A stretch of 64,000 nucleotides of DNA from Octopus bimaculoides (lineage: Eukaryota), in the NCBI RefSeq assembly GCF_001194135.2, contig NC_068996.1, positions 25,273,122-25,337,121 of the forward strand, in the 5' to 3' direction. The notes under the pieces are model-generated. The model was not told the origin of the DNA. It ran no database searches and saw only the letters and a list, made by a program, of their open reading frames with translations. Below, piece by piece: positions 23,030 to 54,873 of this stretch (position 1 is the stretch's first letter; every line of letters starts with the position of its first letter). Both the position numbers and the translations under genes were made by a program.

Positions 23030-23230
23030 CAAGCCACTAATTTTTTAGGAGGAGTGGGTTAGTCAGTTATGTTGACCCTAGTGCTCAACTGATACTTCAT
23101 TTTATAGACTCTGCAAGCATGAAAGCCAAAGTTGACCTCGGTGGAATTTGAACTCGGAACTTAATGAGTTTGAAAAAAGCAGCTAAGCATTTCATCCAAT
23201 GTGCTAATGATTTTGCCTGCTTGCTGCCTT
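23030..23230 (-). mobile_element. SINE family B copy
   Basis: AAAGTTGACCTCGGTGGAATTTGAACTCGGAAC...GCTAAGCATTTC...GCTAATGATTTTGCC is the reverse complement of the 29638 type. Confidence 0.75.
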
Positions 23231-24780: not shown

Positions 24781-24860
24781 CATCATCATCATCATCATCA
24801 TCGTTTAACGTCCGCTTTCCATGCTAGCATGGGTTGGACGATTTGACTGAGGACTGGTGA
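24781..24860 (-). mobile_element. Short, 5'-truncated, apparently young retroposon end with a (GAT)n tail, inserted in a (TA)n run
   Basis: (CAT)7 CGTTTAACGTCCGCTTTCCATGCTAGCATGGGTTGGACG with intact CpGs. The same tail recurs in diverged form at ~10057, ~13275, ~9550 and ~28430. Confidence 0.75.
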
Positions 24861-26528
24861 TATATATATATATATATATGTATGTGTGTATGCATATATA
24901 GATAGATATGCATGTATGTATGTATATTTAAATTTATATTTAAATTCTCAGTCCTCCGTAGATGAAAACTATAACATCTTCATGTCATAGTTTTTTCTGT
25001 GCAAAATAGTATCAGCTGGTTGCAAGTCTGTTGAACAGTTTTTATTCAGAGATTTCTTTCTCCTAGATGATTGTCTTCACTACAACTGGTGAGAACCATC
25101 TATTGATGACTAAGCTCAATGGCCATTGACTCCTGAGTTCTTCCACATCTTTGATGTGTCCTATTTCTCATCCTGTGGGGTGTTCCAAAAATCACCCTCC
25201 TCATCAAGCAAGCTTGGTGGAGTTGCAAGTTTAGTTGTCAACCATGCAACAGCTTGTACTGGGTCACATGTTACCAGTTGAGCAAGAACAACTTGACACA
25301 CAAGAGTGGCCTGACATATATGTATATATGCATGCATGTGTGTATGCATATTGCTTCAAATTTTTATACAAGGCCAGCAATTTTAGGAGAAGCGGGTTAG
25401 TCAGTTACATCTACCCTAATATTTGACAGATGTATTTATTGACTCTGAAAGGATGAAAGGGAAAACTTACTTTAACAGGATTTGAACTCAATACAAAAAG
25501 CCATAAGAAATGTCACTAAGCATTTTGTCTGATACACTAACAGTTCTACTTGCTTGCCTTTTATGTGTTCATCCATTTTAGGTCAGTTGATTAAATTTAT
25601 ATGGAAGTTTTAATATGTAATATTGTATTTAAAGAATATTAAAGAAAAGTAATTTCTTTTATATATAAAATTATAAATAAAAATGAGTTCTGTTAGTATA
25701 TTAGATTATGTGTGTGTATGCGTGTGTGGAGAGAAGGAAGCTGAATTTTATGAAACCCACCAATATACAGATTTGTAGAATTGAGCTGTTTCCTGGTATT
25801 TGTCTTCCATTTTGTGCATTTATTCTTTTTCCAACTATAGAAATTCCAGTTTCTATATATGAAAGAATCTAAATTTCTTTCATTTTATTTAAGCTGTGAA
25901 ATATTTGTAGTAAAAAAGTGAAATTATCATAAGTTATTAAATCTAGTGATAGAAAAAATTTTTTTTTTTTGCTGATAATAGAATTGATGTAGATAATATG
26001 ATGAAGGTATAATGATGGCTCTTTTGCATGACATCTTCACAACTATTGCACTGGATTCTCTTCATTAATTAATTTTAATTTCTTATTCGGTGGTAAACTT
26101 TTAACCTAATCTAATTTTGATTATAGGGTAATTAATTAGTTTTCTGTTAAAGCTTAAGTTGAACTCTGAGGAATCAGTCCGTGTCAAGGCAATTCTATAT
26201 CACATTTCGAATTAGTCTTTAACTAGAGTCCATGCACTTTTACTACAATTATCATACTAAGGCTTTTATACATTTTTATTTTATTTTTATCTTTCTTCCT
26301 AACTTTTTAGAAGGGCTACTTATTCAGCGTTTTTAGAAAATAAAAATAAAATAAAAAGTAATTATCCACTGATCTTTTGACAGTTAATGATATGGAGACT
26401 TTGGTCGACAGGCAACTTATTGAGTCTTCTTGTTGAAGATGATGAGACATTTGTTGTTTGAATTAGTCTATTTTTACCTTGGACTCAAAGGTGACTGAAA
26501 CAAAGCAGGCTGTGGTAGTGGAACATGA

Positions 26529-26561
<33 letters not shown>

Positions 26562-28199
26562 AAAGTGCAAGAGAGTTTAGTATAGGGTGGTCATTAACAA
26601 AGGACTTTAATACATTGTTGTTGGAGAGAAGGGTAGTGGTAGTGGCTTGAAGTAGAAAATACATTGGCTGATAAACTTATTTCTTTTGGTGATTAACATA
26701 ATTTGATATTTCTTTCAATAAACATAGACAATCACTTAACTAGGAAGTGAATGAATAATTTCATTTTTTTTTTTGTATCTAATCTAATAACGACTACTCA
26801 TGGACAGCAAACAATACCCCATCTTTTGATATTTGTTTTTAAAAGCTGGAAATGTTTGCTAAATTATAATTGACATGACTCATTAATTTCCCTTAATATT
26901 ATAGAAAAGAAAAGGTAAATAATGGCTTTAAAATCAACCACATATTAATGTTGCTAATATCAATTTCCTCTTCAGTGCTTAGATATTCAAAATATATTGT
27001 GCTTTTCTTATAAATATTTTCCCCATAAGTCATTATTTACTAAATATAAGGTTATTGCTGATTAATTGTGAGAAAATATATCTTAATAAAACTCTGTGAG
27101 TCTAATTCACATAATAGGTTTTTAAATGAGGTTTTGTTTTTGGTGAGGAACAAAAAGGGAAAATATATCAAATCAACTGAATGCTTTGAGAAAAATATTC
27201 ATTTAAAATATATTTCTGAAAATAAATTAATTACTTAATGTGATTTTGTATTTGAATATTATAGCATAAATTTAACAGCAAGTCATACCGACCTGGTAAA
27301 AGTGATTTAAAGTTATTTCTTACATAAATACAAAACCTTAGATTTATGGTGGTGGTGGGAATAAGTTTTTCTATGTGTGTATTAGTTCATGAGAGGTTAA
27401 GTAGCATCGGTCGTGAATTGAAACTCATTCTACCTTCAGTTGGTGCTTATCAGTAGTTTAAAATGTTAGAAATAAACAAGATTGGTATTTTAATAACAGT
27501 CTTTTATGCATTTTCCTTCATAGTACTGTATAAAGAAATTAAAAAAATAAAACAGAATTTTGTTTCATAAAATAACTAATTTTTTTTTGTTAATATTTTA
27601 ATCATTTAACATAATTGTAAACTTTTAAGAATTATGGATGTCTGTTACCTCTTCGTTACATTTTAATATAAAACTGTTTAATAAGATTAGTCACCAAAGC
27701 TGATATATATTAACATCTAAAATGTACACTGCATTGAAAAGTGAGTAGTTATAAGGCTTTTTCTGAATTATGATTTCATCTATCTGATAATTTTTAAAAA
27801 ATATCGTAGAATATATTGTTTAGGTAATGTCTGTAGGATAAGTAGTTTGGCAGAATTTGCAGACTCTATTTCCTTTTGTCAACTTATGGAAGAATTTGAA
27901 TTTGGTAATATGACTTAATCTTTTCACTGCTTTTTGTGACTTTAGTTAAATACAACAGCCTGTTAAGAAATTTAACTAGTCAAATTAAACAGTATCTATA
28001 AAACTTTATTTTCCAACATTAATTTATTTACTCAGGGAACCAAGTAGCATTGCAAGAGTTAATGTAAATGCATGATAGCTGTATCTTACTCTTTGCAAAT
28101 ATGTAAACTGTTTCACTTTGAGGGGTTGCAATTTTTTGGCTTAAATGACTGCATCTGTTTTTAAAATTCCTTGTCTTACAAGTTGTTTGGTGACTCTGC

Positions 28200-28449
28200 C
28201 AGTGCTAGTGCCACGTAAAAAGCATCCAGTCCACACTATGAAGTGGCTGGTATTTGGAAGGGCATCCTGCTGTAAAAACCATGCCAAACCTGACCTCACC
28301 TGTGCTGGTGCCATGTATTAAACACTCAGTCCACTCTGCAGGTTGGTTGGTGTTAGGAAGGTCATTCAGCCATAAAAACCATGCCAAGACAGTCACAATA
28401 GACTAGGGTAGTCTTCTACCTAGCTGGCAGATGTTAAACAATGATGACA
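28200..28449 (+). mobile_element. Retroposon 3' fragment with a tandemly duplicated ~85-bp module
   Basis: Two copies of GCTRGTGCCAYGTA...GGAAGG(G/T)CAT(C/T)C...TAAAAACCATGCCAA, then GATGTTAAACAATGATGA. Confidence 0.7.
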
Positions 28450-29116
28450 GACAGTAAATATCAAATGAATCTCTGTCAGTTTTGATGATGGAAATTCAGC
28501 TGTTCAGTCAACTGAATTACCTACTAGTTGAATTAAAATTCAAGTGTCCTAATATTCTACAGCTACATGTACCCTTAATGTAATCCTCAGGCAGAATCAA
28601 TATGACACAGTATGTGACAAGGCTGGATTTTTCAAATTACAGGTATAGTCCATTCTGCACAGTTTCTATCTAACCAGTTTCATTCACACAGTTTGGAATG
28701 ACTTTAGGCAGAGGTTAAAAAACAAAAACAAATTTGCTGTAGGTGCTGCATAGTGGGATCAAACCTAGAACCTTGTGATTCCAAATAGAACTTGTTAACC
28801 TTTCAATCACGTTACATCTAATGTAGCACTGATGATGACACGACGAGACTTTGTCTGGAGAGAAAATGGTTCATATGTTCATATTGTTTATGTATTTGCT
28901 ATGAAGTATCAATATAGCTCACACTTCCTTCAAAATATAAAATTGTTGGCCCATCTGACATTACTGCCTGAAGGTGATGACAGATAATTGCATTTATTTC
29001 TTATTGTTTCATGTCACAAGTGACATTAATCAGCAATATTATTATGTAGCTGTTCTGGTAGAAACATTAAGACTTTAAATTGATGTTGATACAATTAGAA
29101 ATTATAAGTTTCAATT

Positions 29117-29118
<2 letters not shown>

Positions 29119-29168
<50 letters not shown>
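29119..29168. repeat. (TG)25 microsatellite
   Basis: Direct reading. Confidence 0.95.
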
Positions 29169-29170
<2 letters not shown>

Positions 29171-29637
29171 AAAGAGAGAGAGAGATAATAACCAATTGGG
29201 TAACAAAATAAATTTAGTAAAACCATGTTTTGAAGGTTAAATTTAAATGTCTATTTCAGACTCAATCCAGGAAATGCATTTGTAGTCCAAATTGAGAAAC
29301 ATGTTCACACGCACATACATGGAAAATTTTAATTATTTTGTTAGTCTTTATATTTTTAAAAATTCATAATTGTTTTTGGCATAAATGCTTGCTTTTGTTT
29401 AAGCCCCGAGTCTGACATAACCAAGTAGAGCTTTAATCAAAGAATTTCTGGTCAATGCCATTGTCTTTTGATGATTAGCTTGAACTACATTATTCTATGT
29501 GGTAGGGTGTGACTTGAGAGAAACTTAGTTGGTATTTCTAGCAGGTTGAGTAACTATATAGGAGGCTTCATTGTTGTGTAGTTCTGTTAAGAGGTGGTAA
29601 AATCAAGTGATTTACTCTCAATATATTACTGATACTA

Positions 29638-29830
29638 AGGTGAGGAGCTGACAGAGTCATTAGCATGTCTGGCTTAGTAGTGTCTTTACATTCTGAGTTC
29701 AAATTCTGCTGAGGTCAGCTTTTCTTTTCATCCTTTTGGAGTTGATAAAATAAGTACCAGTTGACCACAGGGTGGAAATAATCAACTTACTCCTTCCCCC
29801 CACATTTCTGGCCTTATGCCAAAATTTGAA
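29638..29830 (+). mobile_element. Second octopus SINE family (B)
   Basis: AAGGTGAGGAGCTGACAGAGTCATTAGC...TTCTGAGTTCAAATTCTGCTGAGGTC...ATAAGTACCAGTTG. Inverse copies at ~23030-23230, ~25370-25560 and ~41210-41320. Confidence 0.75.
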
Positions 29831-30989
29831 AGCAATAAATTACTGATACTGATTTTACTAACTCAATCAATGGAAGCCAAATCAAAATGCACAATTTTTT
29901 TTATACTTTTATTATTCATATAGTGAAAATTCTTTTGATTATTCAAATTATGTTTTCAGTAGTTGTTTTTTGTGGATCATCTAATGTCTCCATAATTTCT
30001 GACTTTTCAGTTAAGTTATAGCTGTTCTTCACAGATGTTTTTCAATTATTTAGCATTTTCTTAGAGTTGTGTTGAATTGAACCAAAGACATGAAAGTGAG
30101 CATAGCCAAAACTAAGCTACTTAACTGTATTAGAGACTGACTGCATGAAGGAAGTAGTCTGGTGCTTGTCTCAGAAACAAATTACCAGCTTCATTGGTGT
30201 ATTCTTAGTTGATGGAATATGTCTTTAGTCAGTTCAGAAAAATTAACTATTCTTTTAAGTATATCAATTAAATTAGACTGGAATATGAATCATAAACTAT
30301 GCCTCTGAATTTCTTGGTTGACTTGCTTTCTGTAAAAGATATCTTCTATATAGGTGGTAATGTTCAGTTTGAGGTACATGTAAGATATTCCATAATCTAC
30401 TTCTGCAAGAAGCAAAATGTTTCTTGTTCTGTTTGTCTGTCCTTCTCTTTCTCCCTCCTTCCCTCTATGAGCAGACTAAGGAGTGGGACAATATGTAAGA
30501 TAGCGTATACTAGGAGTTTGAATTCTCTAAAGAGGAATTAGATGTGCAGTGCTTAGATGAGAGAAAAACTGAATGCAAGCAAAGATAAGTGATTCAGAGG
30601 ACAAGCAGATATTTGGTTGGATGACGTAAATGGAGGATTTAATGGGGGAGTGAGGTGGTGGTAAAAATGTTTATTTGCAGTGAAAGAACAGATATTACTG
30701 ATTTGTGAACTCTGGTTTTACAGAGGCGATTTTGCAGTCCAAAATGAGGAAGGTTTATTTGGTTTCTGTAAACATATCCTGCTAATGTCATCATGTTAAA
30801 ACAGGCATAAAAGTTACCTTCAGCAATAAATTATTTACTAGAACTTTCTATTATAGGTGGATGTCGAGACAATATGTCTCAAAGGGCATTATTGATTAGC
30901 TGAGATGTTATGATGCCTAAGTAGTCAATAGTGAAGTAATAGCATTGATACTATGTTATTGCTGTTTAAATTTGGGTTCCTGTCAGTTA

Positions 30990-31405
30990 TCATCATCATC
31001 ATTATTTTTGTTGATTTTTAATTTTCATTTTTTCCATCTTTGCATGGTTTGGAAGGAATTCATTTTGGCAGAATTTCTATGTCTGGATGTCCTTTCTATT
31101 ATCAACTCTCACCTCTTTCTAAGTAAGGTAATAATTCTCACTGGCCAGACATTTTTCATGGAAGATTGGAAACAAAGGACGCCATTCGTAGGACAGTAAC
31201 ACTCTTTTACATCTGTTATGCAATGTCAAGACAGAGATTCTAACATATATATGATGAGTTTCTTTCAGTTTTTGACTACCAAATTCCATTCACACAGCAT
31301 TGGTCAGCTCAAGGCTATAGTAGAGGGTGCTAACCACTGTATCATGCAGTGGACTGAACCTGGAGCCATGTAGCAAACTTCTTAACCACATAGCCATACT
31401 TGTCC
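30990..31405 (-). mobile_element. Full-length diverged SINE family A, tail type 2 with (GAT)n end
   Basis: (CAT)n at the left end, GGATGTCCTTTC module, CTTAACCACATAGCCATAC head at the right end. Confidence 0.75.
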
Positions 31406-32066
31406 AGCAATTTTTATTTAATGGAAATTTGTGTGTGGAGAAGAGTGAGTAAGAGAGTTTTAGATACTCAGATTAGCAGCTCAATTATATCCATAAGACA
31501 ATAACCAATCAGCTAAAATCATCACATGCGTGCACGCTCTATGGTACAGGTATTTGGTTTAATCGTCTCTTGAATTCTTTTGACGACTAAGCATATTTCA
31601 CATTCCTTTCACTGCATCACAATGGTGAGATTTTCTTTTCAAGGCCAGAATAAAGTTGTTGACACCATACTTTGTACAAATATTAGATACACCAGAGTAT
31701 TGCTTCCACATCTAAGATAGTTCTATCACATAGATTTATTTGGTCAGTTCTTTATTTAGCTCTCTTTATTATTATTTCTTTTTAAGTCTTTCTATCATAA
31801 CTGTAAGTTTTCTGTCCCTGAATTTGCTAACTCTGTGTACCATTTTTTCATAAATCCTGTCTTTCTTCCTTCTTAGATCTGAGTGGACTCCACTAAAGGC
31901 TCTGCACCTTACACCTCAACACATAACTCATTTCTTCTGGTTCAGTTCTGCATTTTTTCTGAACTTCAAACTAAACATAATCTGACATTGCTTTTAATAT
32001 TAAATGAGATTAAGCTGATAACAAAATCATTAAGGTACACAATACTGTGTATATTAATGTCCACTT

Positions 32067-32513
32067 GGTACAGGTGTGGGTATGTAGTTAAGAAGCTCAT
32101 TTAGGAACCATGTGGATGGAGATTTGTTCCCGTTATGTGGACATTATCAGCTGGTGTCCTCTACTATGTTTGCAAGTTGACCAATACCTTGTGAGTGAAA
32201 TTTTGTAAATGGAAACTCTGTTTTGTATGTATGTATAGATATGCGTGTGTAAGAAACAGCCTGTATTCCCCTTGTCTATGCACTCTGATTGTAAACACAG
32301 TTACTTTTCATGTAAATAGTGTTATTTGTTTGCAGTCCTCTTCAACTGCATGTCTAGGTTATTTGTTTGATAGACAAGAGGAAATATTACCTTGCTTGGA
32401 AACAGGTGAGGGTCAATGACAGGAAGAGTATCTGGCTGTACAAAAGTGTCTCAACATCTTGTCTGATTCATGCAAGCCTGGAAAAGTAGATGTTAAGATA
32501 TGATGATGATGAT
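32067..32513 (+). mobile_element. Full-length diverged SINE family A, tail type 2 with (GAT)n end
   Basis: Head GGTACAGGTGTGGGTATGTAGTTAAGAAG, module GGAAACAGGTGAGGGTCAATGACAGGAAGAG, tail GTTAAGATATGATGATGATGAT. Confidence 0.75.
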
Positions 32514-33394
32514 TAATGTCCAATAAATATTGAACATTTTAATTTATTTTTTTACACTTGATATTTTTATAAGATCTCAAATCAAGTATTTGCTTTGTGT
32601 TAGGAATGTTTTGGCATGACTAAATTAACCTCTGGCTTTTGTCTAATTATACACTTAATATATTTAAATTTGTATTTAAACCATATTATAAGAAATCATT
32701 TTAGAAATGGGAACAGCAATGTTGGTTTAGGCTTGTAGGCACAGTCAAAAAGTTTGTGGAAAACTGGTGTGTTATTTTATTTTTAAAGTTACCTAGCAGT
32801 TTAAATTTATGTGCCTGATGATAAATCCAGCTTTTGTAAACAATCCAAACTGCAACATTTCCGAGATTAGTAGCTATAAATATATCTGAATTTTGTATAA
32901 TATTGTAAGCTTCTATCATGCTCCATTTGTTGAACATGCTAGTTTTTCAGACTTGCATGTGACTTTCATCTTATGCTGGGATTCTTTCAAGTAATTGCAT
33001 ATGTTGTTCATCATAGCTCGACTGAATGCTCTGTGTATACTGTATATACAGGGTTTGCTTTTAATGTGTGTAATAGAGGGTTCTTATTTTTTTCTTTGTA
33101 TCTTATTGCTTATGGAAAGGCAAGGATTTGGTAGAAACTAACTTATGTGGTCTTTAATGTAGTGAGCATCAAATACTTAGATACTTACATGATGAAGTAT
33201 CACAAATTAATCATTTCACCAAGTGCCAGAGACATACTTTGGTCTTATTAAACCTCCTCAGTAACTTGCCAAAACTGTTAAAGTAATAGTCATTGAGCTA
33301 ATTATGTCTTTTCCTTGTAACCTTATTTTTAATTATGTATTAAATTCTTATATTAAATATGTTAACAGTAATTTAACTATTATTTCTCATGCAG

Positions 33395-33407
33395 ATGGCG
33401 TCTACAA
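33395..33407 (+). CDS. KLC: Candidate 13-nt microexon coding (R)WRLQ
   Basis: TATTATTTCTCATGCAG|ATGGCGTCTACAA|GTAATT. It keeps frame only together with the 14-nt exon at 34234. Confidence 0.45.
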
Positions 33408-34233
33408 GTAATTCAGTGATTTAGGTTTTAAAATATACTAATTTTTCATGCCTACTGGTATATATTTACTTAGTGATTCAGTATCTTGCAATTATGGTGA
33501 AATCTGTTTTATTGAAGAGGTTTCATAATATTGAAACATGTTTACAGTTGTCTCCCATACTTAAGTGATAAAATAATAATAGTCGATTAAGTTAAGGTTT
33601 TTTTTTTTGTTAGTATACTATTTATATTTTTCAGTTAGGTAATTAATACTATATTAAATGCTACATAGTTTTGTCCTTCATATATTCGGGTGTGACTTTG
33701 CTTTTCACTCATTCAAAATTGATAAAATCTGTAATATTTTACCACATTACAGTCAACTTGGCCCCTCACTTGTAAAAATTGTTTTTGTGCCTATCTGAAA
33801 AAAAGGGGTAAATAAATGATACTATTGACACAGACAGTAAAACAGCTGGTCTACTTGTAGTAAAATAGCTGAACTACTTGTTACCGCTGTACTTTTGTTT
33901 GCTGTCTTAACAATTTAAGATTAACCACTCTTGCAATACACTTTTCCATTTTCTCTTCCTGGAAATAAGTACTAGTTGCACATGCACACACACACACACA
34001 TTAAGTTCAACGACTGTGTTTCTATTTACTCTCAAAAGAAATAGCATCGTTGTATCTAAAACAGAAGATCCCATTATGCGTGTATGCAAACAAAACACAG
34101 TACTATTCTTGCTCCACCCAATGCCGATTATGTCCCCTAAGTAAGAGCAAATACAAATGCTATTACTTTTAGTGAGTCATTGGAAATCATTATTTGCAGA
34201 AAAGTTTTTTTTTTTTATTATTATTTATTGCAG

Positions 34234-34247
34234 GATCCATTGACAAC
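34234..34247 (+). CDS. KLC: Candidate 14-nt microexon coding DPLT(T)
   Basis: T-rich tract plus TTGCAG|GATCCATTGACAAC|GTATTG. The donor is weak. 13+14=27 nt restores phase 2. Confidence 0.4.
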
Positions 34248-35269
34248 GTATTGTTCCATGTACTTGAAGCACAAATTGTCCATCTTGTATGGGTTTTGAA
34301 TATTGACTAATATTTAAGTTTGTACTTTGTCTTGTCTTATAGATCAGGCAAATGTGAAATGGGAGGGCTACTGAAGAGGACAAATGCTCTCTCTGTATCA
34401 TTTCGATTTAACGAAACAATTATAATGCTGCATTTTTATTATTATTATTATTATTATTATTACATCAATAAACGAACAAGCTGTTAGAAAGCATGAATGA
34501 CTCGGCATCAAAACCGGTTAGCACTTTCAGTTTAACCACACCCATACTTGCAGTCACATATACACACACATCCACATTTATTTTTGTGTGTGTGTGCCCA
34601 CATATACATACACACTTTTAGCATGTACAAGACAAGGAAGGAATCTATGAATTGACTTATTTTATTTACATCATTATAATAGTTGTCACGTAGATATGTG
34701 CAACATGAATGCCAATAGCAACTGTTATGACTAAAAATATTGATTTTTTTTTTCTTTTTACTTGCTGATAGAAACCCAGACTAGACAGACAGAATGGAGT
34801 TTTTTTTTTGTTTTTTCTTTTTTTGTCTTAGGAAACAAAAAAGTATTTGTTGTACTGTCTTAAGCTTATATATATATATATATATATNNNNNNNNNNNNN
34901 NNNNNNNNNTATATATATAAATGATGATGATGATGACAATTATAGTAATAATCAATAATACTATTTTCTAACTTTGGCACAGTACCTCTTATTTGGGAGG
35001 GAATATGTCACTTTCTGTACTGGTCTGATATAAATATTGAGTAAAGAGAAATGGAAAAAATGAAATCCAGTCGAGTAGAGTTTCAACTCCCTAGAAATTA
35101 CAAAGAACCTTATTAGATGGGAACAAATTATTTATACTGCAGGGACACAATAATATATATTTCACTCTGGTGCTCCAGCATGACTACAGCTGTATGGTTG
35201 AAATGTATGAAAGAATATTATATATGTAGTGTGTGTATGTGTTTGTGTTGTGTATATATGTATACCTAT

Positions 35270-35300
<31 letters not shown>

Positions 35301-35904
35301 CAGAATGAAAGTTGGAATACTTAAATTATCTACTTAAAATTCCACCTTTTCTTTTGTTATAAGAATTGCTAAAATGTATTTTTTCCCAAACTCTTAGATG
35401 AACTATAATACTTCTAAGATATGTCAGAATTTTGTGTGTGTGCATGTATGTGGATAGGTGGGTGGTTGATAGGCTGAGTGAAGTGGGGGATAGTGGCAAA
35501 GTAGAACTTGGGATAATCCAAAACGTCATTTATTATTTCTATTCAAGTAGGTTGCTAGGATAATCTTTTTTAAATCCTGTTACAGCCTATCTAAAACTCT
35601 TAATTAAAATCTATTTTTAATGCTTATCATATTTGGCTTACAACCCTTTTTAATAGAGTTTAGTTGTCTTTTATCTATTGTCAGCATTATCTTTGTTTAA
35701 AATTATTCTTAAACTTGTCCTATGTCGTTGCTTTGAATAAATGTAAGTAGAAACTATTTCTTGGTTAAAACCTGAAGATTATTTTTGAGAAATGACATAC
35801 CACAAATTATATTGCAATGATCTTTTGCATTTTGTTTGTGTGTGTGGATGCTTTTGGATCCACACGTACACAGAGGTATGCAAGCATGCACACACACATT
35901 CACA

Positions 35905-35935
<31 letters not shown>

Positions 35936-36534
35936 TAAAATTGTGCATGCGTGTGCATGTAGTTATAAAAATCTGTTGGTAACAGAGGTGACCATCATTA
36001 TTGAATATAAAGTACTAAGTATGAGTAACATTTGTAAAGTGAAAAGGCTTGGTCAGTATCTGTGTTTATATCTGGAGTGGGAGAGTACTCCATATATGAA
36101 GCATATATATTTTATTAAAAGCTGAAGCTTCTTGAATTGTAACACTGAATTTTCACATTACAGATTATTTAACTTCTTCTGAGTGTGTGTATGTATGCAT
36201 AATACATGTAATTATATATGGAAAGTGTGTGTAGGTGTGTGTGGATGGATTGTTTGGTGAATATTTTGTATTTACAAAGTGTCTGTATATTTTATTAGAG
36301 GTTCGTGCTTCTTGATTTCTAATTCTAATTTTCACATTACAGGTTTGTGCATGTGTGTGCGTGTGTGGAACAGTCAGAACAAATTTAATTAAAAGGAAAT
36401 TTATTTAATCTGCTTGAATGAATGTTTTTGTTTTATTAATTTTTTTTATATCTTCTAATGGGACATTATACATTTATCAAAGTTTAACAATCCTGACATT
36501 GTTTTTAAACATTTTATTTTTCTGCTTTTATCAG

Positions 36535-36546
36535 ATATTTATTGAG
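36535..36546 (+). CDS. KLC: Candidate 12-nt symmetric microexon coding (x)YLL(R)
   Basis: Branch-like CCTGAC at 36492-36497, tract ATTTTATTTTTCTGCTTTTATCAG|ATATTTATTGAG|GTAAGC. Strong donor, phase 2-2, no stop. Confidence 0.6.
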
Positions 36547-36619
36547 GTAAGCATCTTTTAGTAGAATAGGCTCTTTGCTACTAATTTCTTTATTAAATTA
36601 TTTTGCATGGTACTTTTCC

Positions 36620-36665
<46 letters not shown>

Positions 36666-38297
36666 AATTCGTTATTGTAATTAATCTTTACTTTTCATTC
36701 TTTTTTTCAAAGTTCTGCTTGTTCAGTAATTTTTAAATTTATTTCTGTCTTTAATATAATAGTCTGAACTTTTAAAACTAAACTTGATTTATTGAAGTTA
36801 ATCATCTTGTGTTCAAATTTATTTTGGCGTATTTGTGTGCATATTTGTGTATGAGTGCATTGGTTGTTTTCTATGTATAAATAATATATGATTAAAATTT
36901 TGCTTATTCCTTTAATACTTTCTTTCTTAAAGTAACATTTTTAGACTCTTTTTCCCCCCCTCTTCTTTTTAGTTAATTGGTTAAGATTCATGTTTTTTGT
37001 AGTGTTTATTTTTGTCTCTTCCTTGCATGTTTCTGAAGAACTTCATTGTTAAATTTAATCTTCTAAGAATTTGTTGAGATATGAATAAAATATTCTTTCA
37101 TTAGAACTGTTTAATCTATTTTTCCATTGCTTCCTCTATTTTTATTCTCTCTTTCAATTATTTTCCCAATTTGAAAAACAAAAAAATTCCTTCTAGAATA
37201 ATGTGGAGGTAACCTCCTGTGTAGCTAAGTGGGCACTGAAACAAAAGTGAGTTGGAACAGAGAGATCTGTTATTCTAGTATAGTTGTTTTGGTGTTAGCA
37301 GTCTGATAAATATCAAGTTGCCTATGATAATAACTCTGAAATGTGTAAAAACACCATTACATCCTTAGACATATAAATATTAGTAAAAACCATCATATGA
37401 CAATCTTCTGGGTCAAAGGTTTTAAGTGAAAAGAAACCCAGATCCTTGATGTGCTAATAATCTGAATGACTGTAAGAATATGACAAATTTTCCAAAATGG
37501 CTTCAATGAATTTGTAAACATATTGGAGGCTTATGAAGCATATTTAAAAATGCCTAATAATGTAAATTTCTCACTTACAGTTCAGTTCGTGAATATGCCC
37601 AGTCTCTAAGTACATGGTAGCTCAAATTTTAGCATAGGTTACTGACTTCCTATTGAGTATTGAAATACAATTTTCTCTTCTTCCACAGCACAGGTCTATA
37701 TATAAATAATATAGATTTAAACAAGCCAAAGTCTTGGAGAGAAAAAAAATTCTTACTGCCAACATGCTTCTCTCTGTCGCTGACAATATCCATGAATTTA
37801 CACAGGATCCTCTAGATGGTCTCTCAGTTTGCTTATTAGATACAAATTAAATTATCTTCAAACTACATCTTAAAAAAAAGACATGTCATCTGAAAATATG
37901 AGAAGCCATGGTTGGCTTACTTGATTAGAATTGATATCATTATCATCCACAATCTGTGAGGGAGCACTGAGTCTTCTAATATTCCTTGCTCTTAATATTT
38001 GCCCCACCTCTGCATCTTCACAAAAAATTGAAAATACCCTTGATAACTGGTATAAAGTATCAGGACTGATATTTGACACTTTTAACAGCTTCACAAAAAG
38101 TAAAACCTGAAGAATTTAAGATTCTCTGTTCTGTCTTGTATTTTACCCTAAAATCTTTCAGTTTATTTACTTAAATAATTTACTCAGTCATCCACCATAT
38201 TTGATTTAGTAGCTCTCAATCAATAGCAGTTACAAACCAGTATTTTTTATTTTTTTAATTTTTTTTCTCAAGAACTTTGAAAGTTTTTTTTGGCCTT

Positions 38298-38337
38298 TGA
38301 CATCAACCTGTTCATATTGACATTAACCTGTTCATAT
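38298..38337. repeat. 20-bp tandem duplication with 1 mismatch
   Basis: TGACATCAACCTGTTCATAT followed by TGACATTAACCTGTTCATAT. Confidence 0.9.
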
Positions 38338-41300
38338 TCAGCATACTCTGTCAGATGTAATGCTATTTATTCACATTGTTTTGAATTAATCACGCATTAT
38401 CTCATAACTGAGATTTCTGCGATGTGACAGCTGAACTAAATAAGATGTTTTTTGACCAGTTTTCCATCATATTCCATCTTTCTCCCGTACCCTGCTATTA
38501 TGCTTGTGATGTCATGAGACAACCGCAGCATAATAATTTAAGAGTGGTTTCAGAATGCTCCTAAGTTAATGATGACACTACAATATATTATACACAAGCT
38601 CCATTCATATGCAGTATCACCATGTGCTGGCATATCTTCAACTTGGGCCATAAAAATAAATAAATAAATAACCTTTCCTTATACTAAAACCAACAGTTGA
38701 CAACACTACATCCCTTTACTTCATTTACTTGTGAACAATACAGCTAAAACCATCATAAATCCCTTACAAATAGTTTACCTTGCAGTCAGTCACTAGCACC
38801 CTCTCACAATGCCCTACATAACCAAGGCTGCTCTACAGTTACTAAGCCTTTCAAAATGTCATTTCTCCTACACATTAACATTCTAGGCCACACCCAAGAA
38901 GAGATATATGCTAAGCAAGTCTTTGCTTACTAATAGACTCAGTGAGATCTCTGACTCCTCCCAAAAATTTGTTTTTCCTTGTCTTCACTTTACAACTAAC
39001 CGGTATAATATTCCCAAATTTTCTGAACATTGTCAACTTTATATTACTGTTATCACTCCCTTTTGTATGGTATGCCATACAATTTGCCCAATGTTTTTTT
39101 TTTTCTCCAGAGTCTCACATCTGTCTGGTATTTTATCTGTCTATGATTTCTTTCCATCTACTTGAAACAGTAACCCACAATTGAGCTGTCACCCATCACA
39201 CCCCTCTCTTTCTTGCTCTACCAACTTCTACAACAATTATTGCTTTTCTAAATATTATTGACTATTACACCTCATTCTTTATGACTCCTTTCTAGAACTG
39301 CTGGCAACAATAGTCACTGTTCCGGATATTGCTGTCATACTTGCATATTTCCATACAATATCTCTCTGAAAGATTCCCTCTTAGCATTATTTTCCTACAG
39401 TTACTCTAAAAAACTACCTGCTCTTACAGATACTACTTTTTTTCCCCCCAGTCACATTTGTCTAGTATTTCCTCTTGGTATATTACTTTCATCCCATAAC
39501 AGTTTATAACAAATATTAATCTTGCTAACCCTTTTCATTCCTTGTTATTCCTGGTAGTTGGAATTCACGACAGCAAATAAGCTATGGGTGCTGCCCATCT
39601 TATTCCAAAGATTTTTTTCAATATCTCAAGAGAAAAAAAAAATTATGCAGCTTGTAATTTGTTTTCATTTTAAATATGGTTTGACTATCCTAAAGGCTTA
39701 TATTTCGGATAGCAGTGAAATAGCTTCATGTGGGAATTGAAACTGGATCAACACTGGCACCATACATCACTGTTTTCTACATGCTGAACAAATATCCAAG
39801 ATCAAATTTCATATATTTTTCTAAAATATATGGTATGCAAGAAAACAAGATATATTAGTGGGTAATCAAATCTAGAATTGAACTAATGTGTGATCAAAGG
39901 GTTAACTATATACAAAGAGATCTTGATGGTATTTGCATCTGCATATAAACACCTCAGTTACTATCACTGTACAAGTCCGTAATCTTTTATTCTGGCACTG
40001 ATACTTCTGAGATTATATTAATTCTAACTTTTGTAAAGTTTCAAGTTTCATCAGATTGCAGTGCTATTTCCTCAAGACTAATTGTAGCCAAGATTTTAAT
40101 AAGGCTGATGTTTTGTTGTAGTCATATAAAAGGGTAGTAATCAATTCTGTTTGAACAAAGAGCCAAAGGTTTCAGTCCAACCAAATTCTTATTTTTTATA
40201 TCCCCTCATGTTTATTCTTCATGTGAAGCATCAACAATTTAACTCTTTTGTTATATTTCTTTTAAAATAACACTGCTGTTGCTTCAATTAATTTTGAAAA
40301 TAATGAATTTATGGGGAGAAAAAATTACCATTATTAAGCCAGTATTTGGAACATGGATTGACATGAAATTTGGATGGAAATTTTTAGCTCATTTTACAAG
40401 ATGAAGTTCCTATCCTTGAACGGGCTATGTTCTGTGCTACTTGGCATGTGTAACACTCGTGTAGTTTCTTACTGTATTTTTACATATAGATCAAACAAAT
40501 TACTTGTGTTTTGTACAAACTAGATATATTTACCATGATTATAGATCTTTTTAACATATATATTTGACCTACTGTATCTGAGACACTACATACACTATGA
40601 AACTTAATTGTCATTTCTAGCAAAGTTTCATTGTTGATCTGTCGTATTTCAGTGAAGAAATAAATCAATATTATCAGTAGTATTCTCTATTCATATCTAA
40701 GAATAGGTGGGTGTGTGCAATATACATAGACACATATTTGCAGGACTGAAATAAATATGAATATTACAAAGTCTAGCTGTAAGAGGAATGCAAATGTAAA
40801 CCTGTTCTTTCTCTGCTCTTGATGTGTGGAAAAAGTGTGAAGGAACCTTCCAATGGACTGTTTCATGGAGACTCACCCTCCTTTTTTTCCCCCCATATAT
40901 TAAAAAGCATTGTAGTAATGTTTTTACAGTTCTTATTTCTCTTGTAGCTTGGTATTGTAATATTCAGATTTATTCCACTTCTGATTCATGCTGTGTTGTA
41001 CGTAAAGTTTACACTTTTTAATTAATGACAACCTGTCAAAAGCACAGATATGAAAACTAGTCTATCCATTATGGCGATGGCTTAATTTACGACAGCTCCA
41101 TACAGCTACTGAAACACTGTTCCATTTGAGTTCATGAAATTGAACATGTGACATATAATGAATTGTGATTTTAGCACGAAGACAGGAGTAGTTAGTTGAA
41201 TACATTGACATTGATACTGGACTGATATTTAATTTTATCAATCCCAAAAGGATGTATGGCTAAGTTGACCTTGTTGGATTTGAATTCAGAACATAAAGGG

Positions 41301-41480
41301 CTGGAACAACTACCACAAATAATTTTACCTTGGGTATTTTGAGTAGAATTGCAGAACAGTGGAATAGCTTGCTGGGAGTTTATAACTACTTAGTAGCACA
41401 GAAACCTAACCATTATGTGTGTCAGTGTATATGTTTCTGAGTAGGTATCTGTGTATTTTGACAGATACAGATATAGCGAG

Positions 41481-41502
41481 CACACACGCGTGCGCGCGCG
41501 CG

Positions 41503-41548
<46 letters not shown>
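41481..41548. repeat. Alternating pyrimidine-purine tract with a (CG)n core and (CA)n tail
   Basis: CACACACGCGTGCGCGCGCGCGCACGCACACA... is uninterrupted YR alternation. Confidence 0.9.
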
Positions 41549-41549
<1 letters not shown>

Positions 41550-41914
41550 CTCCAAAAAATATAAATTTAAAACTGACTTTAAACATCTGTATCTAAATTA
41601 AAGCCTATAAGAAATGCAAGTAATTGTATTTTTTAAATAGCGTAGTATTTGGTGTAGATTAAGATATTTTCAAAGCTATAAATGTTTATAGATTGCAATA
41701 AAAATCTAGGATTGTATCATTGACTGAAAGCTTATTTCTAAATATATTAATGTCCAAATTTTTTTTTGTTTTTGCTTTTCATCCTTCCAAGATTGATAAA
41801 ATAAACACCAAGTCAATATAATTGACTGATCTTTTCTCAAAATTTGTAGTTATTTTAATATTTCAGAAACTACTGAAGTCAGCAAGTTCAGATGCTTTTA
41901 TTTTAACATTTAAA

Positions 41915-42163
41915 AGGTGCAGGCATGGTTATGTGGTTAAGAAGTTTGCTTTACAACCATATGGTTTCAGGTTCTGCCCACTGTGTGACACTTTGGGCAA
42001 GTGTCTTCTAACCATAGTGCCGAACTGACCAATGCTTTGTAAGTGAATTTGGTTTGTCAATATTGCAGTGACTTAGCAGTTCAGCAAAAATGACTAAGAG
42101 GATAAGCATTGGGTTTGATTTATTTGAATAAACCATTTGAAGTGGTACCCCTGCATGGCTGCA
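41915..42163 (+). mobile_element. SINE family A copy with an internal deletion
   Basis: Head AGGTGCAGGCATGGTTATGTGGTTAAGAAG, CORE-like TTTGGGCAAGTGTCTTCT, tail GCATGGCTGCA. Confidence 0.8.
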
Positions 42164-42170
42164 TATTTAC

Positions 42171-42545
42171 CTTTTACTTATTTCACTCATTAGACTGCAA
42201 CCATGCTGAGACACTGCCTTGAAGAATTTTTTACTCAAATGAATCAACCCCAGTACTTGATTTTTTTTTCTTTCAAAGTCTGGTTTTTGTTTTCTTGGTC
42301 CCTTTTACTAAACTGTTAAGTAATGGGGATGTAAACACAGCAGAACAGGTTGTCAAGTGGTGGTAGGGCACAAACACACAAACACACACACATATGACTG
42401 TCTTCTTTCAGTTTCCATCTACCAAATCCATTCACAAGGCTTTGGTCAGCCTGAAGCTATGATAGAAGACACTTGCCCAAGGTGCCACACAGTGGGACTG
42501 AACCTGGAACCATGTCATTGGGAAGCAAGCTTCTTACCACACACA
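42171..42545 (-). mobile_element. Full-length SINE family A copy, tail type 1
   Basis: Reverse complement of the 6659 element from the tail (CTTTTACTTATTTCACTCATT) to the head (GCTTCTTACCACAC). Confidence 0.85.
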
Positions 42546-44448
42546 CACAACCTACCCATCTAGTCAACAAGGTGGCAACATCAGAAGGCCACAACAATGT
42601 AGAGTGCATTGTTAGTAGTGATGTATAACATCTGACAGGCTGATTGATAGTCACACACACACACACACACCCACGCACGTTATATATTTGTAATTAAGAA
42701 GTTTGGAGTGAAACCAGATTTGTGGTAGGAATGCATTAGGCCAAACAATTGGTTGTGAAAAGCCCATCGTGTTTGTGTGCTTTCCACATGAGCAAGAAAA
42801 ATGTGTGGTATGGTTCTATAATGTAGTTCAACTCTCAAAGTTAAGCGTTGTCCAGTGTAAATTTTACCTGTGTCCACTTTTCCATGCTTGTATGTGTCAG
42901 ATGCCTTTTCTGTCACCAACCCTCACCTGTTTCCAAGCAAGACAGTGTTTCCCTATAGTCAGTCTTGTTTTCATAGAAAACTGGAAATGAGAAACATTGG
43001 TTGTATGGTGGTGAAACTCTTTTATCTCTATTGCATAATGTTAGCACAAGGAAAGCTGAACACACACATTCACAGTTTCTTTCAGCTTCTGTGTATCAAA
43101 TCCCTTCTTAAGGTTTTGGTCAGGCTGATGCTTTAGTAGGACTCTTGGTTAAAGTGCCATGCAGTGGGACTGAACCAGAAACCATGTAGTTGAGAAGAAA
43201 ACTTCTTGATCTTGTAACCATACCTCTACCTATATATACAGTGTGTAGTGTGTTTATGTATTTATTGTATACATACATGTGTTTATGTGTATATTGTACA
43301 CGTATGTGTTTATATATTGTATACATACACGTGTGTTTATCTTTATGTATATGCATCTATTGGGTGCAGTGTGTATTGTGTAGTATTTTAGGTGACTAGT
43401 GAGAGTGGAGGGAGTTGTAGCTATTTATTGTCCTTAAATTATGGGCTTCTCATGAGGCTTCTCACAAATTAGAAATTAGAAATGTACCCATTACAAGCTA
43501 CTGTATATTTTTGAAATTTCACATGATTTTGTTTTATTATTTTCTGCTACCATAAACTGTCAATGTTATCTAGGACATCTCAGGAAGTAAATAATAATAC
43601 ATGAATTTTTTTCATTTTTATTATTAATCAAGTATTATGTACAAGCCTCTAAATTCATATATACCAAATATTCATTAAAAATAATAGCTCTGTGTACATG
43701 TATTGTACTATGGGACCTTACATAAAGTTGACTGAATTAAGAACCAATGAAATTACAAAGTTAAAAGCTAGTGGAATTTTCCGGGTTCAGAACCACTGAA
43801 ATTAATTGATTTTTCTTTTCATTAGATATTAAAGGGATATTAAAGTAACTTTAAGAATATAAATATGTATTGACATTAATCTATTTCAAAGTTTCTTTTG
43901 CATCATACTTTTCATTTGATTTTTTTGTCTTGAAATCTAACTCTGTCTTCTTCTGTCTTACACATTTATCTCAGTTATAATAGATCAATTACTGAAGATG
44001 AGCATTGTACATTCTAAATACAAACATGTCTAGGGAGGTTTAAGTCCTCAAAATTAAGCAAAGAAGCTATCCCCAATAAGACTGACTGGTCTTATTCAAG
44101 TGAGCAATAGACAATGTAGAATGGCATGGAGCTTATCTTTAAAACTAATTGGTGAAAGTAACAGTGTTGATTTTATTCAACTTTCTCATCAAAGCCTGTT
44201 CTACTTGGTTGGTAAGTCTGAGTTGACATTCACAATCCTAGTTACTACATTACTTCTTTCTTTCTCTATGTCTCTGTATTTAAAAAAAAGTTTATTTCAC
44301 AACCACATGACCCCTGATTCAGTCCCACTGTGTAGTACCTTTGGAAAGTGTCAAACTGAACTGGAACGACCACTACCTTGTGAGTGAATTGGTCAGACAG
44401 AAACTGTATAGAGCCTCTCTTTTCTCTCTCTCATACGGTGTGTGTGTT

Positions 44449-44495
<47 letters not shown>

Positions 44496-45770: not shown

Positions 45771-46092
45771 CTTTTTACTTGTTTCAGTTATTGAACTGTG
45801 ACTATGCTCAGGCATCCCCTTGAAGAGTTTAGATATTTTAAAGTCTAGCACTTACTCTGTGGGTCCCTTTTGCCAAACCTATAAATATAGTGACATAAAC
45901 AAATCCATATCAGTTTTCAAGTGATGGTAGGGGTACACAACACACACGTTTTTTTTGGAATAATGATTGTTGAAGCACATCATATACAGCTACCAAATCC
46001 ACTCAGAAGGAATTGGTTGGCCCAGTAGAAGACAATTGCACATTGGGACTGAACCCAAGACCACATGTTTGTGGAGCAAGCTTCTTAGACAA
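45771..46092 (-). mobile_element. Diverged SINE family A copy, tail type 1
   Basis: TTTTACTTGTTTCAGTTATTG...TGGGACTGAACCCAAGACCACATG. Confidence 0.75.

Positions 46093-47435: not shown

Positions 47436-47474
<39 letters not shown>

Positions 47475-49353: not shown

Positions 49354-49391
<38 letters not shown>

Positions 49392-49597: not shown

Positions 49598-49602
<5 letters not shown>

Positions 49603-49654
<52 letters not shown>
49603..49654. repeat. (CA)n microsatellite
   Basis: Direct reading. Confidence 0.95.

Positions 49655-49660
<6 letters not shown>

Positions 49661-51848: not shown

Positions 51849-51895
<47 letters not shown>

Positions 51896-54830: not shown

Positions 54831-54873
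<43 letters not shown>

What the first reader, a model, noticed from the sequence alone, without database searches (positions are those of the whole stretch)
33380..36610. Three candidate microexons share a TGC-at-acceptor plus downstream-ACTAAT signature
Seen: the acceptors are CTCATGCAG, TTATTGCAG and TCTGCTTTTATCAG. ACTAAT lies 30, 59 and 34 nt after the three exons (33437, 34306, 36580). TGCATG lies at 36604, ~58 nt after the 12-nt exon. Established: intronic UGC close to the 3' splice site is the element used by SRRM4/eMIC-domain proteins for neural microexons. ACUAAY is the QKI/How (STAR) site and UGCAUG the RBFOX site; both typically enhance inclusion from downstream positions. Inference: the three are co-regulated, tissue-specific microexons. 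This signature was not used to pick them, so it is partly independent support. In two of the three the TGC is part of the TGCAG acceptor itself, which weakens that part.
Basis: partly seen in the sequence, partly recalled or inferred. Interest (0 to 1): 0.7.

Follow-up and report, generated by a model that had tools for sequence, protein, structure and literature searches.

The report
Look-alike microexons in kinesin intron
Three tiny exon-like stretches deep inside the 54-kb first intron of a mollusc (octopus-like) kinesin light chain gene do carry the motifs described, but nothing beyond sequence coincidence shows they are used; only the 12-base one looks like a plausible real microexon.

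Summary
Every string and coordinate in the finding is correct. The stretch lies in what is very probably intron 1 (8790-62824, + strand) of a kinesin light chain (KLC) gene. That intron sits between a short first coding exon (MENKELEE, 8764-8789; inferred) and the conserved second exon (62825-63068; shown).

ACTAAT is rare after decoys: 2.1% of 3,994 AG-(9-30)-GT decoys in the intron. A selection-free test is much weaker. Among 28 comparably strong decoys, ACTAAT follows 3 (p=0.021) and ranks only 43rd of all hexamers.

None of the three ACTAAT has the QKI half-site. TGCAG is also the acceptor of the constitutive exon 2. The 13- and 14-nt candidates each give a stop codon unless both are included, and their donors are moderate and poor.

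The 12-nt candidate is different. It has the best acceptor/donor pair in the intron, is in frame, and has a 52-nt AG-free zone, a UGC at -12, and ACUAAU and UGCAUG downstream.

No transcript or orthologous sequence could be reached, so usage is untested. Most likely these are chance pseudoexons (~0.76). The 12-nt exon may be real (~0.15). All three being co-regulated is unlikely (~0.02).

The parts
8748..8789 (+). Putative first coding exon of the kinesin light chain gene. The acceptor-like sequence is tttttacag|ACC. The coding sequence runs from ATG 8764 to 8789 and reads MENKELEE plus the two bases AG (phase 2). The donor is AAG|GTAATT.
   Evidence: Sequence. It joins exon 2 in frame to give MENKELEERKKIEEIGKMTALSQ.... 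It has the Kozak context ACCATGG and a donor score of 8.4 bits. It is one of 21 ATG/phase-2/donor units in the window, and the only one that has a charged coiled-coil-like peptide and sits at the CpG step. This exon is inferred, not shown.
8790..62824 (+). Putative KLC intron 1, 54 kb, phase 2. It is strongly CpG-depleted and contains all three candidates.
   Evidence: CpG observed/expected falls from 0.6-0.9 (1-8 kb) to about 0.1-0.2 (9-64 kb). Exon 2 has a conserved acceptor, and the sequence just after it is coding.
33395..33407 (+). Candidate 1: 13-nt AG...GT unit ATGGCGTCTACAA. The acceptor is ctcaTGCag, the donor CAA|GTAATT.
   Evidence: Acceptor 9.7 bits, donor 5.2 bits. Included alone it shifts the frame into a TGA in exon 2. 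The AG-free zone upstream is 26 nt.
33437..33442 (+). ACTAAT (in context TACTAAT), 30 nt after candidate 1.
   Evidence: No UAAY half-site within 24 nt on either side. It equally matches the branch-point consensus, and an AG follows at +37.
34234..34247 (+). Candidate 2: 14-nt AG...GT unit GATCCATTGACAAC. The acceptor is ttatTGCag, the donor AAC|GTATTG.
   Evidence: Acceptor 9.4 bits, donor 0.0 bits. The neighbouring GT at 34260 gives a better donor (1.9 bits), which would make a 26-nt unit. Included alone it reads AGG ATC CAT TGA, an in-frame stop.
34306..34311 (+). ACTAAT, 59 nt after candidate 2.
   Evidence: No half-site. It is followed by a pyrimidine-rich stretch and an AG at +37, so it can also be read as a branch-point look-alike.
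34888..34909 (.). Assembly gap (22 N) inside a (TA)n microsatellite, between candidates 2 and 3.
   Evidence: The same repeat lies on both sides, one base out of register. The gap has no bearing on any candidate or motif.
36535..36546 (+). Candidate 3: 12-nt AG...GT unit ATATTTATTGAG. The acceptor is ttcTGCttttatcag, with the TGC at 36523-36525. The donor is GAG|GTAAGC.
   Evidence: Acceptor 10.1 bits and donor 10.1 bits. It is the only pair in the intron at or above 10/10, against 0.07 expected in order-1 Markov simulations and 0 on the minus strand. The AG-free zone is 52 nt, the 93rd percentile. It is in frame and would insert four residues, giving EE-RYLL-RKK.
36580..36585 (+). ACTAAT (in context TACTAAT), 34 nt after candidate 3.
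   Evidence: No half-site.
36604..36609 (+). TGCATG (RBFOX-type hexamer), 58 nt after candidate 3.
   Evidence: The background rate is 4.7% of decoys.
62825..63068 (+). KLC second coding exon. It starts in phase (A + KKIEEIGKMTALSQEDII...LGLGEAQ). The acceptor is ttttgcag, the donor CAG|GTACGA.
   Evidence: PDB kinesin light chain 1 (9pmb_C) matches at E=9.5e-18. About 70 homologous genomic ORFs were found. The 25 nt before the internal ATG change only synonymously in L003, L004 and L005. KKIEEIGK is kept in many distant ORFs, including ones that lack that Met.

Best explanation
The 3.2-kb stretch is ordinary deep-intronic sequence in the long first intron of a kinesin light chain gene. It is AT-rich (about 31% G+C), T-rich on the sense strand, and full of microsatellites. 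Sequence of this kind throws up many AG...GT pairs preceded by pyrimidine runs. The three units are such pseudoexons. The shared ACTAAT and TGC are coincidences that look meaningful because these short AT-rich words have names: QKI site or branch-point consensus, and SRRM4 site or the common TGCAG acceptor. They are normally not spliced into KLC mRNA.

Shown: the gene, exon 2, the coding phase at its start, the motif positions and the decoy statistics.
Inferred: exon 1, the intron extent, and non-usage of the candidates.
For: - The intron + strand holds 48 units of 3-30 nt with scores at least as good as the weakest candidate. The minus strand holds 14, and order-1 Markov simulations give 23.
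- In the selection-free test, ACTAAT follows 3 of 28 strong decoys (p=0.021) and ranks 43rd among hexamers.
- No ACTAAT has the UAAY half-site, whereas 16 of 32 ACTAAY in the window do. The bipartite site is described in PMC9786888.
- TGC within 20 nt upstream is seen at 17% of decoys. TGCAG is the acceptor of the constitutive exon 2 here and in L005.
- Candidates 1 and 2 are 13 and 14 nt. Each alone gives a premature stop. Their donors score 5.2 and 0.0 bits.
- No homologue of any ORF around the candidates was found among 5.8 billion proteins, and there are no repeat copies in the window. Nothing marks the stretch as conserved or special.
Against: - If the picks were truly blind to the motif, three of three with ACTAAT (2% background) is improbable.
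- All three ACTAAT-positive strong decoys are also TGC-positive (about 0.003, post hoc).
- Candidate 3 is the best-scoring pair in 54 kb (0.07 expected) and has the full microexon layout.
- No expression or conservation test could be run, so non-usage is inferred, not shown.
Confidence: 0.76

Rival explanations
1. Only the 12-nt unit (36535-36546) is a genuine alternative microexon of KLC. When included it inserts four residues (RYLL, with the flanking Arg codon rebuilt) between MENKELEE and KKIEEIGK, at the extreme N-terminus ahead of the heavy-chain-binding coiled coil. Inclusion would be helped by an eMIC/SRRM-type factor at the UGC at -12, and by RBFOX (UGCAUG +58) and/or a STAR protein (ACUAAU +34) downstream.
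For: - It is the best acceptor/donor pair in the intron (10.1/10.1 bits; 0.07 expected by simulation, 0 on the minus strand).
- It is a multiple of three and open in the KLC phase.
- It has a 52-nt AG-free zone with a CTGAC branch-like site about 40 nt upstream, a pyrimidine tract and then a UGC before the AG. This is the layout described for SRRM3/4-dependent microexons: distant branch point and pyrimidine tract, UGC between them and the AG, strong 5' splice site (bioRxiv 10.1101/2024.09.17.613571).
- TGCATG and ACTAAT lie within 60 nt downstream.
Against: - All thresholds were set after seeing the candidate.
- There is no transcript or conservation evidence.
- The exon itself is 83% A+T, with no obvious enhancer.
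- To my knowledge, KLC isoform diversity in squid, sea urchin and vertebrates is C-terminal, not N-terminal.
- Nothing was found in the literature searches.
Confidence: 0.15
2. One reading: all three units are co-regulated, tissue-specific microexons. The 13- and 14-nt exons are always included together (27 nt, RWRLQDPLT-type insert), with or without the 12-nt exon, under combined SRRM4/eMIC, QKI/How and RBFOX control.
For: - The combinations c1+c2 and c1+c2+c3 are open in the KLC phase.
- All three have TGC within 20 nt upstream and ACTAAT within 60 nt downstream, a pair of marks seen at 0.65% of decoys.
- Only these three among the strong decoys have ACTAAT.
Against: - It requires obligatory co-inclusion of two exons 826 nt apart, each of which alone causes a stop.
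- Candidate 2's donor scores 0.0 bits and candidate 1's 5.2 bits.
- Frame openness over about 14 codons is expected roughly 35% of the time at this base composition (my calculation).
- There are no QKI half-sites.
- The hexamer rank is 43.
Confidence: 0.02
3. The ACTAAT words act as branch points (SF1/U2 sites, consensus UACUAAC) for cryptic or unannotated 3' splice sites just downstream, rather than as QKI enhancers of the upstream units.
For: - Two of the three read TACTAAT.
- At 33437 and 34306 a pyrimidine-rich stretch and an AG follow at +37 from the motif start.
- SF1 and QKI are reported to compete for ACUAA branch sites (PMC13004596; title and abstract seen).
Against: - No exon-like ORF, donor or conservation follows those AGs.
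- At 36580 no AG follows within 80 nt.
- Words like these are expected by chance in AT-rich DNA.
Confidence: 0.03

Closest known systems
Pseudoexons / decoy splice-site pairs in long introns
   Same: The units are short AG...GT pairs with decent pyrimidine tracts, deep in a 54-kb intron. They are as numerous as expected for T-rich sense-strand sequence (48 comparable units on the + strand). There is no conservation or coding signal around them.
   Different: Candidate 3 scores higher than any other pair in the intron, and it carries several named regulatory words at canonical distances.
SRRM4/SRRM3 (eMIC-domain) dependent neural microexons
   Same: The sizes (12-14 nt) are in range. A UGC lies within 20 nt of the acceptor AG at all three. 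Candidate 3 also has the distant branch-like site, the order pyrimidine tract then UGC then AG, and a strong 5' splice site, as described in 10.1101/2024.09.17.613571.
   Different: Two of the three are not multiples of three, and each alone introduces a stop. Two have moderate or poor 5' splice sites. In two, the UGC is just the UGCAG acceptor, which is also used by the constitutive exon 2. Neural inclusion, factor dependence and flank conservation are untested.
QKI/How (STAR family) response element, and the SF1 branch-point consensus UACUAAC
   Same: The core ACUAAU lies in the downstream intron at +30 to +59, a position from which QKI can promote inclusion (Capzb exon 9, cited in PMC9786888).
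   Different: The defined element is bipartite (NACUAAY plus UAAY within 20 nt), and the half-site is absent at all three. The same word is equally a branch-point match.
RBFOX downstream intronic enhancer (UGCAUG)
   Same: One exact UGCAUG lies 58 nt downstream of candidate 3.
   Different: It is a single copy at one candidate only. 4.7% of decoys have one in the same window. Conservation, the usual criterion, is untestable here.

Membership tests
Alternatively spliced microexon (any kind) | The unit is present in mature mRNA, shown by junction reads or cDNA. | not testable with these tools
   The protein libraries hold only genomic ORFs of mollusc KLC and no spliced mollusc product. A paper with an Octopus bimaculoides splicing data set was found, but none of its supplements are held.
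Alternatively spliced microexon (any kind) | It lies inside a transcribed intron, on the sense strand of a gene. | tested here: met
   KLC exon 2 is at 62825-63068 (+) and starts in coding phase. A CpG-depleted domain runs from about 8.5 kb to 64 kb. Putative exon 1 is at 8764-8789. The intron's 5' boundary is inferred.
Alternatively spliced microexon (any kind) | Inclusion preserves the reading frame, as is typical for coding microexons. | tested here: inconclusive
   The 12-nt unit preserves it. The 13-nt unit alone leads to a TGA in exon 2. The 14-nt unit alone has an internal TGA. Only c1+c2 together keep the frame.
SRRM4/eMIC-dependent microexon | A UGC lies between the pyrimidine tract or branch point and the acceptor AG. 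| tested here: met
   TGC is at -5..-3 (candidates 1 and 2, as TGCAG) and at -12..-10 (candidate 3). The mark has little weight: 17% of decoys have one, and the constitutive exon 2 also uses TGCAG.
SRRM4/eMIC-dependent microexon | A strong 5' splice site, plus a branch point and pyrimidine tract displaced from the AG (long AG-free zone). | tested here: inconclusive
   Candidate 3 meets it: donor 10.1 bits and a 52-nt AG-free zone. Candidates 1 and 2 do not: donors 5.2 and 0.0 bits, AG-free zones of 26 and 29 nt. The scoring matrices are approximate, written from memory of published frequencies.
SRRM4/eMIC-dependent microexon | High conservation of the flanking intron sequence, and neural-specific, factor-dependent inclusion. 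| not testable with these tools
   The closest relative (L001, about 90% identical in the intron next to exon 2) is held only as contigs of about 1 kb that can be reached through proteins. No ORF near the candidates has a hit.
QKI/How response element | The core NACUAAY is present. | tested here: met
   ACTAAT at 33437, 34306 and 36580.
QKI/How response element | A half-site UAAY lies within about 20 nt of the core (bipartite element; PMC9786888). | tested here: not met
   There is none within 24 nt on either side at any of the three. 16 of 32 ACTAAY in the window have one.
RBFOX-regulated exon | A (U)GCAUG in the proximal downstream intron, usually conserved. | tested here: inconclusive
   It is present once, at +58 of candidate 3 only. 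The background rate is 4.7%. Conservation is not testable.
Kinesin light chain gene (host gene) | An N-terminal heptad-repeat region homologous to KLC. | tested here: met
   Exon 2 matches human KLC1 residues QDEII...SEAQ at E=9.5e-18. There are 306 representative homologues at E<=0.001, including full-length vertebrate KLCs. The TPR exons lie outside the window.

The most novel reading that the evidence does not exclude
At least the 12-nt unit is a real, regulated microexon. It would insert four residues at the very N-terminus of a cephalopod kinesin light chain and would be recognised through the bilaterian eMIC-type layout together with downstream RBFOX and STAR-protein sites. In the extreme version, the 13+14-nt pair is a coupled two-exon cassette in the same intron.
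Probability: 0.15. Interest if true: 0.4.

Novelty: not a real feature. Interest (0 to 1): 0.15.

Why it matters
If the 12-nt exon were real, it would be an example of the ancestral neural microexon programme in a lophotrochozoan motor-protein adaptor. It would also be an N-terminal KLC isoform, whereas known KLC diversity is C-terminal. That would be of moderate interest to people working on splicing evolution and axonal transport.

As it stands, the value is mainly methodological. Short AT-rich motifs with names (ACUAAY, UGC, UGCAUG) recur next to splice-like pairs in AT-rich introns often enough that sharing them is not evidence of co-regulation.

A useful by-product is the gene model. The KLC start codon lies in a tiny upstream exon, and the 25 nt before the apparent ATG of exon 2 are coding.

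Tried and rejected
1. Orthologous sequence around the candidates. I concatenated 21 low-complexity-masked ORFs from 32.7-36.9 kb and searched 5.8 billion proteins. There were no hits. The negative is weak, because only called ORFs are indexed.
2. An exact 23-mer of candidate 3 in JGI metagenome contigs: 0 hits.
3. Short-word BLAST of the candidates against the four loci held at that point (L001-L004), and a search for a 12-nt YLL-type unit upstream of exon 2 in L003: only noise.
4. Transcript-derived KLC proteins that would show the exon 1/2 junction or inserts. Both protein libraries hold only genomic ORFs for molluscs.
5. Exon 1 in two other molluscs within 10 kb upstream of exon 2 (L003, L005): not found, so the intron is long there too.
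6. Pfam on all + strand ORFs of at least 50 aa between 1 and about 49 kb: no family, so there is no sign of another + strand gene. The rest of the + strand and the whole minus strand were not scanned this way.
7. Repeat origin. The candidates have no other copy in the window.
8. Recursive-splicing reading of candidate 3: rejected. Joining exon 1 to ATATTT does not rebuild a 5' splice site. Only two weak AG|GTRA sites exist in the intron.
9. Literature on octopus microexons. One preprint includes O. bimaculoides, but its supplements are not held and it does not mention KLC.
Full report
**1. Observation**

Every string and coordinate in the finding is right.
- The three AG...GT units are 33395-33407 (13 nt, ATGGCGTCTACAA), 34234-34247 (14 nt, GATCCATTGACAAC) and 36535-36546 (12 nt, ATATTTATTGAG).
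- Their acceptors are ctcaTGCag, ttatTGCag and tTCTGCttttatcag.
- ACTAAT starts 30, 59 and 34 nt after the units. TGCATG starts 58 nt after the third.

The assembly gap at 34888-34909 sits between units 2 and 3, inside a (TA)n microsatellite that continues on both sides. The repeat is one base out of register across 22 N, as expected for an estimated length. No candidate, motif or reading frame crosses the gap. It affects only the nominal 2.3-kb spacing.

**2. What the region is**

*Sequence type.* The window is eukaryotic: 31% G+C, many (TA)n and (CA)n runs, six assembly gaps. A 186-nt segment at 6650-6835 has twelve diverged matches of 39-165 nt in the window. From memory it resembles an abundant octopus SINE, but the organism was not tested.

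*Exon 2.* The one clear exon is 62825-63068 on the + strand.
- It encodes KKIEEIGKMTALSQEDII...LGLGEAQ.
- It matches human kinesin light chain 1 in the PDB at E=9.5e-18.
- It has about 70 homologous genomic ORFs from other, mostly mollusc-like, assemblies.
- The exon has a conserved acceptor.

*Phase at the start of exon 2.* The 25 nt between that acceptor and the apparent start ATG are coding.
- In three other species they differ only at third codon positions: AAA/AAG, GAA/GAG, ATT/ATC.
- KKIEEIGK persists in distant ORFs, some of which lack that methionine.

So the true start lies in an upstream exon that ends in phase 2.

*Exon 1.* The best candidate is 8764-8789.
- It reads ACCATGG AAAACAAAGAATTAGAAGAAAG|gtaatt, that is MENKELEE plus AG.
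- It joins exon 2 to read MENKELEERKKIEEIGKM....
- It sits exactly where CpG observed/expected drops from 0.6-0.9 to 0.1-0.2, and the ratio then stays low to the end of the window. I read that pattern as the start of a germline-methylated gene body.
- Twenty other ATG/phase-2/donor units exist in the window. None has a KLC-like peptide or this position.

*Intron 1.* I therefore place the finding inside KLC intron 1 (8790-62824, 54 kb, phase 2). Exon 2 and its phase are shown. Exon 1 and the intron's 5' end are inferred.

*Other genes.* No Pfam family hits any + strand ORF of at least 50 aa between 1 and about 49 kb. The rest of the + strand and the minus strand were not scanned this way.

**3. 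Consequences of inclusion**

- The 12-nt unit alone is in frame and gives EE-RYLL-RKK.
- The 13-nt unit alone shifts the frame into a TGA in exon 2.
- The 14-nt unit alone reads AGG ATC CAT TGA, an in-frame stop.
- Only 13+14 together (27 nt), with or without the 12-nt unit, stay open.

At this base composition, about 14 codons stay open roughly 35% of the time by my calculation. The open frame is therefore weak evidence.

**4. Splice-signal quality**

I scored sites with approximate metazoan position weight matrices written from memory. The scores are therefore relative only.

| Unit | Acceptor (bits) | Donor (bits) | AG-free zone upstream (nt) |
|---|---|---|---|
| 13 nt (33395-33407) | 9.7 | 5.2 | 26 |
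| 14 nt (34234-34247) | 9.4 | 0.0 | 29 |
| 12 nt (36535-36546) | 10.1 | 10.1 | 52 (93rd percentile) |
| KLC exon 2, for comparison | 9.7 | not scored (coordinate slip) | 71 |

- The intron + strand holds 48 units of 3-30 nt at least as good as the weakest candidate. The minus strand holds 14, and order-1 Markov simulations give 23±6. This reflects the T-rich sense strand.
- At 10/10 bits or better, the 12-nt unit is the only pair. The simulations expect 0.07, and the minus strand has 0.
- The 12-nt unit also has a CTGAC branch-like site about 40 nt upstream, then a pyrimidine tract, then UGC at -12. This is the arrangement described for SRRM3/4-dependent microexons (10.1101/2024.09.17.613571).

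**5. The shared signature**

*Decoy rates.* These are the background rates among the 3,994 AG-(9-30)-GT decoys in the intron:

| Mark | Share of decoys |
|---|---|
| ACTAAT starting within 60 nt downstream | 2.1% |
| ACTAAY starting within 60 nt downstream | 2.6% |
| TGCATG starting within 60 nt downstream | 4.7% |
| TGC within 20 nt upstream | 17% |
| TGC upstream and ACTAAY downstream together | 0.65% |

Random decoy triples share any hexamer downstream only 4-6% of the time.

*Selection.* These figures assume that the three units were picked blind, which cannot be verified. A test that does not depend on the picks takes one decoy per acceptor and keeps the 28 with scores comparable to the candidates.
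- ACTAAT follows 3 of them (p=0.021).
- It ranks 43rd among hexamers. ATTGAC, TAATAT, ATTAAT and others are more enriched.
- With a few dozen named splicing-regulator hexamers, finding one of them at that rank is unremarkable.

*Residual oddity.* The three ACTAAT-positive decoys are all among the five TGC-positive ones. That gives about 0.003, but the motifs and distance windows were chosen post hoc.

*Against specific function:*
- None of the ACTAAT has the UAAY half-site of the bipartite QKI element, whereas 16 of 32 ACTAAY in the window do.
- Two of them read TACTAAT, which is equally the branch-point consensus that SF1 and QKI compete for.
- TGCAG is also the acceptor of the constitutive exon 2, here and in L005.

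**6. What could not be tested**

- No transcript-derived mollusc KLC exists in either protein library.
- The closest relative (L001, about 90% identical in the intron next to exon 2) is held only as contigs of about 1 kb that can be reached through proteins. None of 21 ORFs around the candidates has a hit.
- An exact-word scan of metagenome contigs found nothing.
- A preprint that includes Octopus bimaculoides splicing data has no supplements held.

Usage and conservation, the two decisive criteria, therefore remain open.

**7. Verdict**

- The most likely explanation (about 0.76) is chance pseudoexons in a long AT-rich intron, with named short motifs nearby by coincidence.
- The 12-nt unit deserves a junction-read check (about 0.15 that it is real). 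It is the single best microexon-like pair in 54 kb, is in frame, and has the complete eMIC-type layout plus UGCAUG downstream.
- The 13- and 14-nt units fail several expectations. The three-exon co-regulation reading is unlikely (about 0.02).
- If the 12-nt exon were real, it would be a new member of a known kind: a neural-type microexon in a cephalopod KLC. It would not be a new mechanism.

Noticed in passing
window 62800-62850; L003 9970-10010; L004 about 290-340; L005 9970-10010: The 25 nt between the exon 2 acceptor and the apparent KLC start ATG are coding. Only synonymous third-position changes separate the species, and KKIEEIGK persists in distant ORFs that lack the Met. Gene models that start KLC at MTALSQ would be truncated.
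   Followed up: yes
window 8748-8789: A tiny putative first coding exon of KLC (MENKELEE, phase 2) with Kozak ACCATGG. A two-codon upstream ORF (ATGTGA) lies 13 nt before it. The exon also has an acceptor-like tttttacag in front, so a further 5'UTR exon may lie upstream.
   Followed up: partly
window 1-9000 versus 9000-64000: There is a sharp step in CpG observed/expected, from 0.6-0.9 to 0.1-0.2, at about 8-9 kb. I read it as the border between unmethylated upstream DNA and a germline-methylated gene body. Local CpG bumps occur at 34-35 kb, 41-42 kb, 48-49 kb and 54-55 kb, and may mark younger insertions.
   Followed up: partly
window 6650-6835 and matches at 9588, 15376, 18420, 21542, 31245, 32179, 41908, 42392, 43077, 44300, 45987, 50370: A 186-nt SINE-like segment has twelve diverged matches (68-89% identity, 39-165 nt long) in both orientations. 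From memory it resembles an abundant octopus SINE. This is the only hint at the organism, and it was not tested.
   Followed up: partly
window 47904-48711 (-): Two ORFs look like remnants of a mariner/Tc1-type transposase (...PPSDYHLFRSLQNHLDGKN...). Pfam gave only weak helix-turn-helix hits for one and nothing for the other, so the naming rests on memory.
   Followed up: partly
window 1-2200: A purine-rich block (GC skew +0.38, AT skew +0.39) has long overlapping ORFs on both strands, which suggests a tandem or satellite-like repeat. It was not analysed.
   Followed up: no
window 36106-36166 and 36286-36345: A 61-nt direct repeat (80% identity) lies 180 nt apart. Each copy ends in ...ttttcacattacag, an acceptor-like sequence, just upstream of candidate 3.
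   Followed up: no
window 10786 and 23700: These are the only two AG|GTRA junctions in the intron with a fair pyrimidine tract (8.9 and 9.6 bits). They are possible recursive-splicing ratchet points for the 54-kb intron, but they are weak and untested.
   Followed up: no
window 7035-7415, 45212-45238, 47598-47896, 51899-52235, 61328-61660: There are five further assembly gaps. At least the gaps at 7035-7415 and 51899-52235 are bordered by microsatellite sequence, like the gap inside the finding.
   Followed up: no
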